A stretch of DNA of 62,950 nt, filler included, from Reticulomyxa filosa (lineage: Eukaryota; Protista; Foraminifera): assembly GCA_000512085.1 (NCBI GenBank). It is 20 parts of 20 records of this genome, joined end to end, with 100 filler letters (N's around TTAATTAATTAA, not from the genome) between each part and the next. Parts side by side here need not be neighbours in the genome. Positions count along the whole stretch, not along the records: positions 22,052 to 23,951 come from ASPP01033577.1; 19 more parts are not named here. The stretch is one strand, 5' to 3'. A model generated the notes under the pieces. It made no database searches, was not told where the DNA came from, and was given only the letters and a program-made list of their open reading frames with translations. Of this stretch, positions 2,707 to 23,951 are shown piece by piece. How positions within the stretch are numbered: position 1 is the stretch's first letter; the number at the start of each line of letters is the position of its first letter. The position numbers were made by a program, and so were the translations under genes.

Positions 2707-4664
2707 CCTCCTTTTTTTTTTTATTTTTATTACAATTTTTTTTCCCCCCCCCCCTCCCCACACTTTCTTCCTTGTGTGCCTTTTTTTTTTTATAATTAAT
2801 TTTCTAATTTTGTCAACCTTGAAAGATTGTACTTGTTTCCTTGACTTAAAGTCAAATTATTGATTAAATATTACACACTCAAACTTTTCATCTCTTAGGA
2901 TTTTTTTTGTTTTGGCTAACTTCCGCTGGGCGAAAAAAAAGCTTACAGCTTTCCTATATATTTTGTTACCACATAAACCGCTTTGCTCGTTTTCTCGGGC
3001 TAAAAAATTATAACACGTGCAACAGCTAATGCCTTTATTGTTTGCTGGGTCTATTCTTGCTCACAAAAAGAGTTTGACAAATATAAAATACTGCGTAACG
3101 GGTTTAAAATACTGATTTTTTTTTTATACATAATTATATAGATAATGCCCAATTTGTAATATTCGCGTCAAATGGCAGCGAAAGAGAAACATTCTGGATC
3201 ATCGGCTCCTTGCCATGCAAGTTGCAGTGCTTCATCCATATCGTCATCTTCAAACAAACACTCCAAAGTGAGTTTTGTAAAGAATATGGCAAGCGAAACG
3301 TTTGATAAATGAAGGAAAAACAAAAAAACAACAAAAAAAAAAAAAAAAAAAAAAANNNNNNNNNNNNNNNNNNNNNNNNNNNNNNNNNNNNNNNNNNNNT
3401 TAATTAATTAANNNNNNNNNNNNNNNNNNNNNNNNNNNNNNNNNNNNNNNNNNNNTATAGTAATAATCTTTCGTAACAAAGCTATACGGAACATACTTTT
3501 ACTGATGATCGGTATTGACATACACCACAATATTGTCACATATTTCGCAATTTATTTAATTTTTCATTTATTTCTTGCAACACTTCATCAAGATCCAGAT
3601 ATTTTAATATAATTCTTAATTATAATTTTATTTTATTTTAATTTTAAAATTACGTTATATTATCTTGATGCTTTTATTGAAAAATAATATGTGTACAAAC
3701 TTGCTCATATAATCAAATTTTTTAAACAGTTTTTTTTTTTGAAATATGCTATTTCCACATTTTCAAACAATTATCTTATTTTATAAAATAGATTATATTC
3801 AATGAAAAGGCAAGTATTTACGAAAGATAATTCATGTAAACTATGGAGATCTATCATTTGGTATTTTGACTTTATCATTAGAGATTGTGTTCACAATTAG
3901 GCAACTGTTGGAAAAAACGCAGCAATTGCAGACAAATAAAAAAAATGGACTCAAGATTTTTTGACAAAATTTCTGGTAACAATTGTCGCAAATGTATTCG
4001 TACATATATTGAAATTTTTTGTCCATTTGATTGGTTTTACAATATTATTGCATTTGTGGCCGATATTTTCTTCAAAAAATGGAGGAATGAGTGTGCAAAA
4101 CTTATGCTGTTGTTGGAAGGTTGAAACTTCTCAAAACTATAATCATGGTTTCAATTTTATTTCACACAAAGAAAATATTTTTTTCTTGTTTGAATGTTGG
4201 CCTGTATTCCTTCCACTGAGGGAAATCTCCTCTGATTCAACAACAAAGAAAGCAAATACTTATACAGTAAGGTTCTAATCAAACATATTGCGTTCATTAT
4301 CATATTTGTGAGTTGTTTTGAATGTGGAATTGACCACGTATTTTTTATTGATCCAACGTCACAGAACATATATTAAACTTGATATCAGTAAGTGCATTGC
4401 AATGTAAAAGATCTATTTGTCAATGTTGAGAGAAAGAGTTTAATAGCTTGCATTGAAATCAGGGTACATGAACAATTTTTTCGCTTTACAGACATATGTA
4501 TCATATTATGTGTAGAGCATTATTAAAAGAAAAAAGAGTTATTGAAAAATAAGGACAGGCAACACAAACAAGTAGACAATAGTTTTCAAAAAAAAAAGTA
4601 AAACCAAAAAAGAGTATATTGACACAACATTTGTTCTCAAATAGCATTATTGTCAGATCAAATT

Positions 4665-22051: not shown

Positions 22052-22984
22052 AGCTCTTTGGAAGCTTATCAAATTTTTTACCTTTTCTTTCGTACCACAT
22101 CTTTTTAAGGAAAATTACAGCACTTTTGCAGATAGTCGGTAACTCCCTGATACATTTCACCTGTTTTTTATTTTATATATTTACGTATACAAACAGTACA
22201 AAAAATCTAGTTTAAACAATGTACGTACTGATAAAATTGAATTCCAATTGCTCAAGTTGACTTGGAACAATTTTTTGGTTGTCAAATCCGATGTATCGAT
22301 ACGATTCATGATTTCACAGTAAGTTTGTTGAGATTTTGGTTCGTTCAATTGCTTGGTAATCTCGTCAATATTGTTTTCCCAAATCTTAATGTCCCATAAT
22401 GTTAATTGCGATGATATACAATGGAACGCAACCAAGACATCAAATTGGATATTTTTCCATACAATTGAAATGTAAGCCGTTTTGCCTTGTGTATACTCAC
22501 GTTCGACAATGTATCCTCCTCCGGGGATATCCTGTGCTGTCTGTTTGATCAACGTAGCCAAGCGCGAAAAAAATGGACGATATACTATTTCTTCAATAAT
22601 GCCATGATGTGCTGTTCTAAGCACACTTTGTGGAATATTCAGCAAAAACACTAAATCTCCATCGTATGAATCGGCAATTGCTGTTCCTTTTTGAACACTT
22701 CCTCCCAACACCGCCCCAAAAAATTTCGCACCTGACCAATCTTCTTTTTCCTTGCCAAATATACTAAATACATTTTTCTCGCTCATTTCATTATATAAAT
22801 TTCGCGCAGCCTCCACCACTGCTCGGGTTTGATAATCACGTATTTTGTAACGCCTCACGGCATTTTTTACGTTTGAAAAAGCGCTCAAGTTTGAGGACGT
22901 TTCCTCGTTCTCGTCATCTTGTTCCTTTTCGTGTTGCTCATGGATGTCAATAAAGTTTATTTTATCAATAGGTTTGCCATCCAT
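22052..22984 (-). CDS. 2'-5'-oligoadenylate synthetase (OAS)/CD-NTase-like nucleotidyltransferase, 3' truncated
   Basis: VLGGSVQKGTAIADSYDGDLVFLL and IQFDVLVAF give the GS motif plus three Asp. A 68-nt intron (22228-22161) joins in frame to VKCIRELPTICKSAVIFLKKMWYERKGKKFDKLPKS, matching the OAS C-terminal lobe start. Confidence 0.82.
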
Positions 22985-23575
22985 TGGAAAATTCAATCTT
23001 TCACACAATCTAGTCAAAAGAAACTTTAAAAAGAAAAAAACAAGTTGTTGGCGTTGCCTTTTTTAGTTTTCACTTTGAACTACTTGTTAACTTTTCGGTC
23101 AACTCTATAAAAAAGAGTGGAGAATATCCAATGCATAATTGATTGTTTCGTGTTCTTTGCAATTACTTTATAAAATTACAAACATTTATCACGGTCCACT
23201 AATAAATATATTTGGATACAATGAAATTTGTAATATCTTTCTCGTTGTAATCGAGTAATGCATAATACTTTTGGTAATGCAAGATTTGTTATTTGAAGGA
23301 CTGCATCGTCAGTGTTATACTCATTCGAAATAGATGGATTAGAAACAGAAAAAAACTAAATGAAAAATATGTAGCATAATGTAATATTTTTGAAGACATT
23401 CAACAATAAAGACACATTTCACTGTTTTATATTTAATTTTAAAATTGAGCATTAAATAAAAATGTGTAAATGTGCACTTATATTAATATTTATTTCAAAC
23501 TTTTTGATTATGTTTAGTGATCAAGTTAAAGCAAAATGGAATATATTTGCGCTGAAAAAGAAAAAAGTTTGAGAT

Positions 23576-23951
23576 TTATGAAAAAGTAGCATTTGCTAAA
23601 GATGTACAAGTCAAAGGACCTTTAGAAGTCATAAAACGAATTCCGTTAAAACAAGCTTCACAACGATCATTAGTTTTTAAAAAAGGAACAACATCATCCC
23701 ATGGAGTCGGTCCTTTCTTTTTTTTTGGTTTTAAATCAATTTCAGAATCAGGAGTATATCTAGTTAAATCATCATTTTCAAGAATAATACGTTCACCTAT
23801 TGAACAATCTTTAGGAGGACGAATTAATTCAATTTTAGATTTGTCAGAATTACTTGCTGCAAATATCATACCATTTGACATTACACCTCTTAAATCTGTT
23901 GGTTTTAAATTTTTAAATACAATAACAAGTGAATCTCGCACTTCATTTATT
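23576..23951 (-). CDS. EMAPII/Arc1p-like tRNA-binding OB domain, C-terminal fragment
   Basis: NLKPTDLRGVMSNGMIFAAS...IELIRPP..SIGERI; 5' end cut by a linker. Confidence 0.85.

What the first reader, a model, noticed from the sequence alone, without database searches (positions are those of the whole stretch)
22052..22984. Intron-containing OAS/CD-NTase-like enzyme in a protist: candidate nucleotide second-messenger immune sensor
Seen: GGSVQKGTAIADSYDGDLVF and FDVLVAF keep the GS motif and all three metal-binding Asp. A short GT-AG intron missed by the ORF track links in frame to RELPTICKSAVIFLKKMWY...KLPKS. Known: animal OAS has GGS..KGT.L...SDADLV, FDVLPAF and RPTKLKSLIRLVKHWY...LPP, and OAS, cGAS and CBASS CD-NTases make antiviral 2'-5' or cyclic oligonucleotides. 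Inference: a genuine nuclear OAS-like synthase in a probable rhizarian, a group where I know of no characterised example. Its effector is unknown, and it has a ~90-aa N-terminal extension with an acidic patch.
Basis: partly seen in the sequence, partly recalled or inferred. Interest (0 to 1): 0.85.

Follow-up and report, generated by a model that had tools for sequence, protein, structure and literature searches.

The report
Foraminiferan OAS-like enzyme, already catalogued
This is a real gene of the single-celled foraminiferan Reticulomyxa filosa for a relative of the animal antiviral enzyme OAS; the same protein already sits in a 2023 published family tree, its activity is untested, and what is new here is a corrected gene structure and a hint that the locus exists as strongly diverged working and broken versions.

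Summary
The piece is R. filosa contig ASPP01033577.1 (RFI_34063). Exon 1 (22984-22229) carries GGSVQKGT, D108/D110 and D182. A 68-nt phase-0 GT-AG intron (22228-22161), at the same site in a 39%-identical paralogue, leads to exon 2, which the contig end cuts. Each exon alone has an animal OAS as best PDB hit, in collinear order (weak E-values); the ESM Atlas ranks OAS above SMODS, DZF and CCA enzymes. It is not new: this exact protein (EukProt P006249) is in Culbertson and Levin 2023, who score R. filosa OAS-positive, STING-negative, and find OAS in 8 of 12 eukaryote supergroups. The '90-aa extension' is mostly the normal OAS spine helix; about 30 aa are extra. Added here: the public model misses the intron and C-lobe; the genome holds nine related sequences, several dead; two sister contigs are identical in the flank yet up to 26% divergent beyond it and carry stops, suggesting divergent open and null alleles. 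Activator, product, effector and expression are untested. Interest 0.3.

The parts
22229..22984 (-). Exon 1, 252 codons from ATG 22984: acidic tail, spine helix and nucleotidyltransferase lobe
   Evidence: ORF; same ATG in L002 and L005; best PDB hit OAS2 391-456, E 0.27; PADLOC oligonucleotide cyclase E 6e-4; Atlas OAS3 0.94
22895..22984 (-). True N-terminal extension, about 30 aa, net charge -8, predicted disordered; most variable coding part between copies (81% nt identity)
22778..22894 (-). Predicted long N-terminal helix (residues 31-69, net charge +4), equivalent to the OAS/cGAS spine helix
22682..22705 (-). GGSVQKGT motif (G94-T101): GS turn and the Lys equivalent to OAS1 K66
   Evidence: aligned to OAS2 GGSTAKGT; OAS1 numbering from my knowledge, role of K66 from PMC11359028
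22646..22669 (-). SYDGDLVF: first two metal-binding Asp (D108, D110)
22424..22447 (-). QFDVLVAF: third Asp (D182)
   Evidence: aligned column in the published alignment
22161..22228 (-). 68-nt phase-0 GT-AG intron, missed by the NCBI model RFI_34063
   Evidence: same site in NCBI model P0005
22052..22160 (-). Exon 2, first 36 codons: start of the OAS1_C-type helical lobe; cut by the contig end
   Evidence: only PDB hit human OAS1 4ig8 198-228, E 1.4; paralogue P0005 matches OAS1_C 30-82, E 0.037 and OAS2 544-597
22052..23362 (-). Divergent block: 2-26 differences per 100 bp against sister contigs L002 and L005, highest around the 5' end of the gene
23363..23951 (-). Flank identical to L002 (and to L005 but for one base in an A run): 3' part of a tRNA-binding-domain gene (23951-23576) plus about 210 bp non-coding

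Best explanation
A nuclear gene for an OAS-superfamily nucleotidyltransferase (about 0.93 for family membership), probably the open version of a polymorphic locus. Shown in sequence: two-lobe OAS architecture in order, GS turn, Lys99 and three catalytic Asp. Inferred from OAS1: D108, D110 and D182 hold two Mg2+; the enzyme rests in an off state; binding of a nucleic acid, most likely double-stranded RNA, along the spine helix and first C-lobe helix closes the site (Lys99 to the Glu of the PKSYSLE motif, seen in sister copies); it then joins ATP into short 2'-5' oligoadenylates that act as an infection signal. The receptor cannot be true RNase L or STING and is unknown. Frequent duplication, loss of catalysis and divergence between copies fit a defence gene under pathogen pressure. 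Odds: gene expressed and catalytically active 0.7; nucleic-acid-activated, linear 2'-5' product 0.55 of that; defence role likely but unshown.
For: Exon-wise PDB hits to OAS2 and OAS1 in collinear order; OAS1_C on paralogue; Atlas features 0.94-0.95 and structure TM 0.68 to OAS versus 0.58 SMODS, 0.52 DZF and CCA; published tree and catalogue. OAS1 K199 equivalent is Arg, K66 equivalent kept, E233 equivalent kept in L005, L001 and L004; these residues matter for dsRNA activation. Exon 1 open while both sister copies have 2 stops and 3-5 one-base deletions; no polarised amino-acid change on the window branch between codons 78 and 169; dN/dS 0.34-0.45. RNase L proper is limited to jawed vertebrates (PMC10400998); R. 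filosa scored STING-negative.
Against: Every direct sequence hit is weak (E 0.04-1.4). My two AlphaFold models are poor (pLDDT 46-47) and do not separate OAS from DncV, poly(A) polymerase or TUTases. The OAS1 R195 equivalent is Val/Ile (position by ungapped extension). No RNA run listed. About half of the C-lobe lies beyond the contig. dN/dS between the two broken copies is also low (0.26, 6 vs 6 changes), so the selection test does not discriminate. Silent-site GC 0.39 versus 0.04 in the neighbour gene suggests low expression.
Confidence: 0.5

Rival explanations
1. Same family, other chemistry: it works like the bacterial clade C CD-NTases next to the OAS branch, making a cyclic or otherwise non-2-5A oligonucleotide, or is switched on by a protein partner rather than dsRNA, or has a non-immune role.
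For: OAS superfamily nests in clade C, whose members make cyclic tri-adenylate; R195 equivalent absent; PADLOC cyclase hit; best VIA hit of the exon-1 model is DncV, Z 8.7; sister copies carry a coiled-coil tail and two paralogues an extra N-terminal domain, which could be partner-binding parts; the 2023 authors warn that function cannot be read from homology.
Against: Sequence and Atlas hits favour animal OAS over SMODS families; no close bacterial or viral relative found.
Confidence: 0.25
2. The window copy is a young pseudogene or decaying copy whose lesions lie beyond the contig end; the working enzymes are the three distant paralogues.
For: Of six close copies, two have stops, one has frameshifts, two have lost catalytic Asp; no RNA evidence; selection test not discriminating.
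Against: 252 open codons, intact triad and splice sites; window branch 7 synonymous to 9 non-synonymous changes against 3.7:1 expected the other way (p 0.036), none in the catalytic core.
Confidence: 0.2
3. A different Pol-beta-family enzyme (DZF/ILF2, NRAP, poly(A) polymerase, TUTase, archaeal-type CCA enzyme) with convergent motifs.
For: Foldseek top hit of the weak model is yeast poly(A) polymerase; DZF and Nrap score 0.88-0.91 in the Atlas.
Against: Those hits have TM below 0.3 and rest on a pLDDT-46 model; OAS-specific motifs in both lobes; published phylogeny.
Confidence: 0.04
4. Contaminant (bacterial CBASS gene or animal prey) in the assembly.
For: Short contig; no close relative in any other organism.
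Against: Spliceosomal intron shared with paralogues on other contigs; nine related sequences in the assembly; AT-rich flank and silent-site GC within the range of neighbouring genes; no match in 185,579 prokaryote genomes.
Confidence: 0.01

Closest known systems
Eukaryotic OAS superfamily of CD-NTases, Culbertson and Levin 2023 (PMC10732462), R. filosa clade
   Same: The identical protein record (EP00480 P006249 = RFI_34063 = ETO03347.1) is in their set; five R. filosa sequences form a clade with support 100, beside a Tetrabaena and a dinoflagellate group.
   Different: They used the mis-spliced model lacking the C-lobe and with doubtful 5' exons; they do not discuss R. filosa in the text and miss four further copies found here.
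Vertebrate OAS1/OAS2/OAS3 (2'-5' oligoadenylate synthetases)
   Same: GGS..KGT, DxD, third Asp in FDVL.AF, C-lobe helices, P..Y.LE and I.DP motifs in the same order; K66, K199 and E233 equivalents kept.
   Different: About 16% structural identity; R195 equivalent not kept; an insertion before the C-lobe; acidic 30-aa tail; coiled-coil C-terminal tail in sister copies; no RNase L partner outside jawed vertebrates.
Bacterial CBASS CD-NTases of clade C (CdnC type; SMODS domain)
   Same: Same fold and catalytic triad; sister group of the OAS superfamily in the published tree; PADLOC cyclase profile hits residues 81-116.
   Different: Intron-bearing nuclear gene, no operon, no adjacent effector; lower Atlas scores; no close bacterial relative.
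Chlamydomonas reinhardtii OAS-domain gene cluster (bioRxiv 10.64898/2026.06.19.733452)
   Same: Uncharacterised, duplicated protist OAS-like genes with a selection signal.
   Different: There a species-wide sweep from population data; here divergent copies in one assembly, with no population data.

Membership tests
Pol-beta nucleotidyltransferase superfamily | GS turn followed by DxD, third Asp on a later strand, alpha/beta palm | tested here: met
OAS superfamily (clade plus OAS1_C domain) | OAS1_C helical lobe after the NTase lobe | tested here: inconclusive
   Below Pfam cut-off: E 0.037, 14 bits vs 19.9 on P0005; none on the 36-aa exon 2; but exon 2's only PDB hit is OAS1 198-228 and Atlas structure TM 0.68 over 257 residues of P0005
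OAS superfamily (clade plus OAS1_C domain) | Phylogenetic placement in the OAS clade | not tested
   No tree built by me (no distant homologues retrieved as sequences). Published result: species scored OAS 1, cGLR 0, eSMODS 0; tree neighbours read; the other three published trees not traced
OAS superfamily (clade plus OAS1_C domain) | Closer to OAS than to SMODS, Mab-21/cGAS, DZF, NRAP, CCA | tested here: met
   Atlas features and structure; PDB sequence hits. My own low-confidence folds were not discriminating
Vertebrate-type 2-5A synthetase | dsRNA switch residues K66, R195, K199, E233 | tested here: inconclusive
   K66 met, K199 met as Arg, R195 not met (Val), E233 beyond the contig but present in sister copies
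Vertebrate-type 2-5A synthetase | dsRNA-dependent synthesis of 2'-5' oligoadenylate | not testable with these tools
   needs an enzyme assay
OAS-RNase L pathway | RNase L partner in the same genome | not tested
cGAS-like receptors (cGLR) | Mab-21 domain | tested here: not met
   No Mab-21 Pfam hit; Atlas rank below OAS; scored 0
CBASS CD-NTase | Prokaryotic operon with adjacent effector; SMODS domain | tested here: not met
   Intron; neighbour is a tRNA-binding gene; no SMODS Pfam hit; no prokaryotic locus
Expressed protein-coding gene | Spliced transcript with complete open frame | not testable with these tools
   No RNA run listed; contig ends in exon 2

The most novel reading that the evidence does not exclude
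The window, L002 and L005 are three alleles of one locus: flanks identical, the OAS-like gene strongly diverged, one allele open and two null. That would be an immune-type balanced polymorphism at a protist OAS, and the open allele would make a nucleotide signal read by an effector that is neither RNase L nor STING, giving a handle on what OAS did before the vertebrate pathway arose.
Probability: 0.25. Interest if true: 0.65.

Novelty: already known. Interest (0 to 1): 0.3.

Why it matters
Protist OAS-like proteins are known from surveys but none has a known activator, product or receptor, and RNase L arose only in jawed vertebrates. The corrected model matters in a small practical way: anyone testing the public protein RFI_34063 would express a half enzyme. 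The copy pattern (duplication, dead paralogues, sharply bounded divergence with null versions) is modest independent support for a defence role. R. filosa is a poor experimental system, so algal or amoebal OAS genes are better places to settle the open question.

Tried and rejected
Pfam on exon 1 gave only a weak NTP_transf_2 hit; NCBIfam nothing. Homologue searches returned only R. filosa proteins; scans of metagenome, prokaryote and viral contigs found nothing; these reach only close relatives. A profile of the five paralogues lost the OAS hit in PDB. Two AlphaFold jobs on 5-row alignments gave pLDDT 46-47, good only for the superfamily. The N-terminal domain of two paralogues looked SAM-like by eye, but Pfam and PDB gave no SAM hit: left unassigned; the PDB hits there are noise. 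NCBI's 5' exons of RFI_34063 were rejected: no likeness to paralogue N-termini, and the region has 36 gap columns against the sister copies. Horizontal transfer was not supported by silent-site GC. Synteny in two metagenome relatives of the neighbour gene could not be read, contigs too short. The R. filosa genome paper is not held. The label 'G95*' for L002 is a script artefact; the codon is Trp.

Full report
Identity. The 1,900-base piece is the whole of contig ASPP01033577.1 of the Reticulomyxa filosa assembly GCA_000512085.1. The gene lies on the minus strand and is annotated as hypothetical protein RFI_34063; the same record is ETO03347.1 and EukProt EP00480 P006249. The assembly is fragmented, N50 3.6 kb (PMC13746701).

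Anatomy. Exon 1 runs from ATG 22984 to 22229, 252 codons. It has an acidic tail of about 30 residues, a long predicted helix (31-69), then GGSVQKGT (94-101), D108 and D110, and D182. A 68-nt GT-AG intron (22228-22161, phase 0) follows. Seven GT-AG pairs could join the frames (the script checked candidate junctions for stops in memory only and saved nothing). This one has the same context in three related copies and matches the junction NCBI chose in the 39%-identical paralogue P0005. Exon 2 gives 36 codons before the contig ends. The public model reads through the intron to a stop and adds 5' exons with no support. No RNA run was listed, so splicing is inferred.

Family. Exon 1's best PDB hit is human OAS2 391-456 (E 0.27); exon 2's only hit is human OAS1 198-228 (E 1.4); P0005's only hit is OAS2 544-597 (E 0.088), and it touches Pfam OAS1_C below cut-off. 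Each is weak, but they are independent and collinear. The ESM Atlas ranks OAS first by features (0.94, 0.95) and by structure (TM 0.68 over 257 residues of P0005, against 0.58 SMODS and 0.52 DZF and CCA). PADLOC's cyclase profile hits residues 81-116. My AlphaFold models were poor and show only the superfamily.

Prior knowledge. Culbertson and Levin 2023 (PMC10732462) include this very protein and four other R. filosa proteins in their CD-NTase alignments and trees. The five form a clade with support 100 among eukaryotic sequences next to bacterial clade C, and the catalogue scores the species OAS 1, cGLR 0, eSMODS 0, STING 0, viperin 0. OAS homologues are reported in 8 of 12 supergroups. So the class and the member are known, though never discussed or tested. 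RNase L proper is confined to jawed vertebrates (PMC10400998).

Copies. Six close copies exist in the assembly plus three distant ones in the paper. L002 and L005 share two stops and two one-base deletions. The plus copy on L001 keeps the triad but has frameshifts; the minus copy on L001 has Asn for both first Asp; P0005 has lost two of three. The three distant proteins keep the motifs. P0005 and the L001 minus copy start with a shared domain of about 75 aa, 28% identical, which I could not assign. L002, L005 and the L001 plus copy end in a heptad-repeat tail; the window copy probably does too, but that part is missing.

A bubble around the gene. The window, L002 and L005 are identical from 23951 to 23363 (bar one base in an A run), including 210 non-coding bases, then differ by up to 26 bases per 100 around the 5' end of the gene and 2-10 per 100 inside it. 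L002 and L005 are identical for their first 1,200 and near-identical for their last 340 bases and differ by up to about 18% only across the gene's 3' half. The simplest reading is divergent alleles of one locus, one open and two null. Recent duplicates with homogenised flanks, or flanks copied by the assembler, are not excluded, three alleles need more than diploidy or a mixed culture, and I have no genome-wide control. Balanced polymorphism is known for mammalian OAS1 (PMC4458282), and a Chlamydomonas OAS cluster shows a sweep.

Is this copy alive? For: open frame, intact triad and splice sites; dN/dS 0.34-0.45 to other copies; no polarised amino-acid change in codons 78-169 on its branch. 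Against: the two broken copies also show a low ratio to each other (0.26), the 3' end is unseen, and silent-site GC of 0.39 against 0.04 in the neighbour suggests low expression. I put it at 0.7.

Mechanism. Shown: the catalytic residues and the two-lobe order. Inferred from OAS1: two-metal catalysis, and activation by nucleic acid through a Lys-Glu switch. The K66 and K199 equivalents are kept (the second as Arg), the E233 equivalent is kept in sister copies, the R195 equivalent is Val. Most likely it makes short 2'-5' oligoadenylates on binding double-stranded RNA, as an infection signal to an unknown receptor; the main rivals are a clade-C-like cyclic product or other activator, and a young pseudogene.

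Verdict. Observation confirmed, family assignment supported, novelty low: already catalogued, uncharacterised. Interest 0.3, carried by the corrected model, the open question of the protist OAS effector and the possible allelic divergence.

Noticed in passing
window 23576-23951 (-); L002 1-564: 3' part of a tRNA-binding (OB-fold, EMAP II/Arc1p-like) gene, PF01588 E 7e-11, not annotated on this contig; silent-site GC only 0.04, suggesting high expression; identical in three contigs.
   Followed up: partly
window 22052-23362 versus L002 and L005: Sharp switch from 100% identity to 74-98% at 23362; L002 and L005 re-converge after the gene. Looks like divergent haplotypes centred on the OAS-like gene.
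   Followed up: partly
window about 23033-23088; L002 1034-1090; L005 1033-1089: A 57-base stretch upstream of the gene also matches the sister contigs in reverse orientation (88%), pointing to a short inverted repeat in the 5' region; a weaker one lies near 23413-23474.
   Followed up: no
L001 1-1082 and 2142-3204: Two OAS-like copies as a head-to-head inverted duplication, 78% identical, with dN/dS about 1.15 between them; one has lost catalytic Asp, the other has frameshifts.
   Followed up: partly
L004 5438-5698; L001 1094-1327 (-): Shared N-terminal domain of about 75 aa on the two catalytically dead paralogues; SAM-like by eye, no Pfam or PDB support; absent upstream of the window copy.
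   Followed up: partly
L002 2590-2892; L005 about 2620-2850; L001 about 3840-4030: Heptad-repeat coiled-coil tail of 60-90 aa after the OAS C-lobe, annotated as part of a separate gene in L002 and L005.
   Followed up: partly
L006 411-863 (JGI 3300030743): Metagenome contig with a 79%-identical tRNA-binding protein, probably from an unsampled relative of Reticulomyxa.
   Followed up: partly
L004 1117-1593 and 2869-3262: WD40-repeat gene with internal and inverted repeats upstream of the P0005 paralogue.
   Followed up: no
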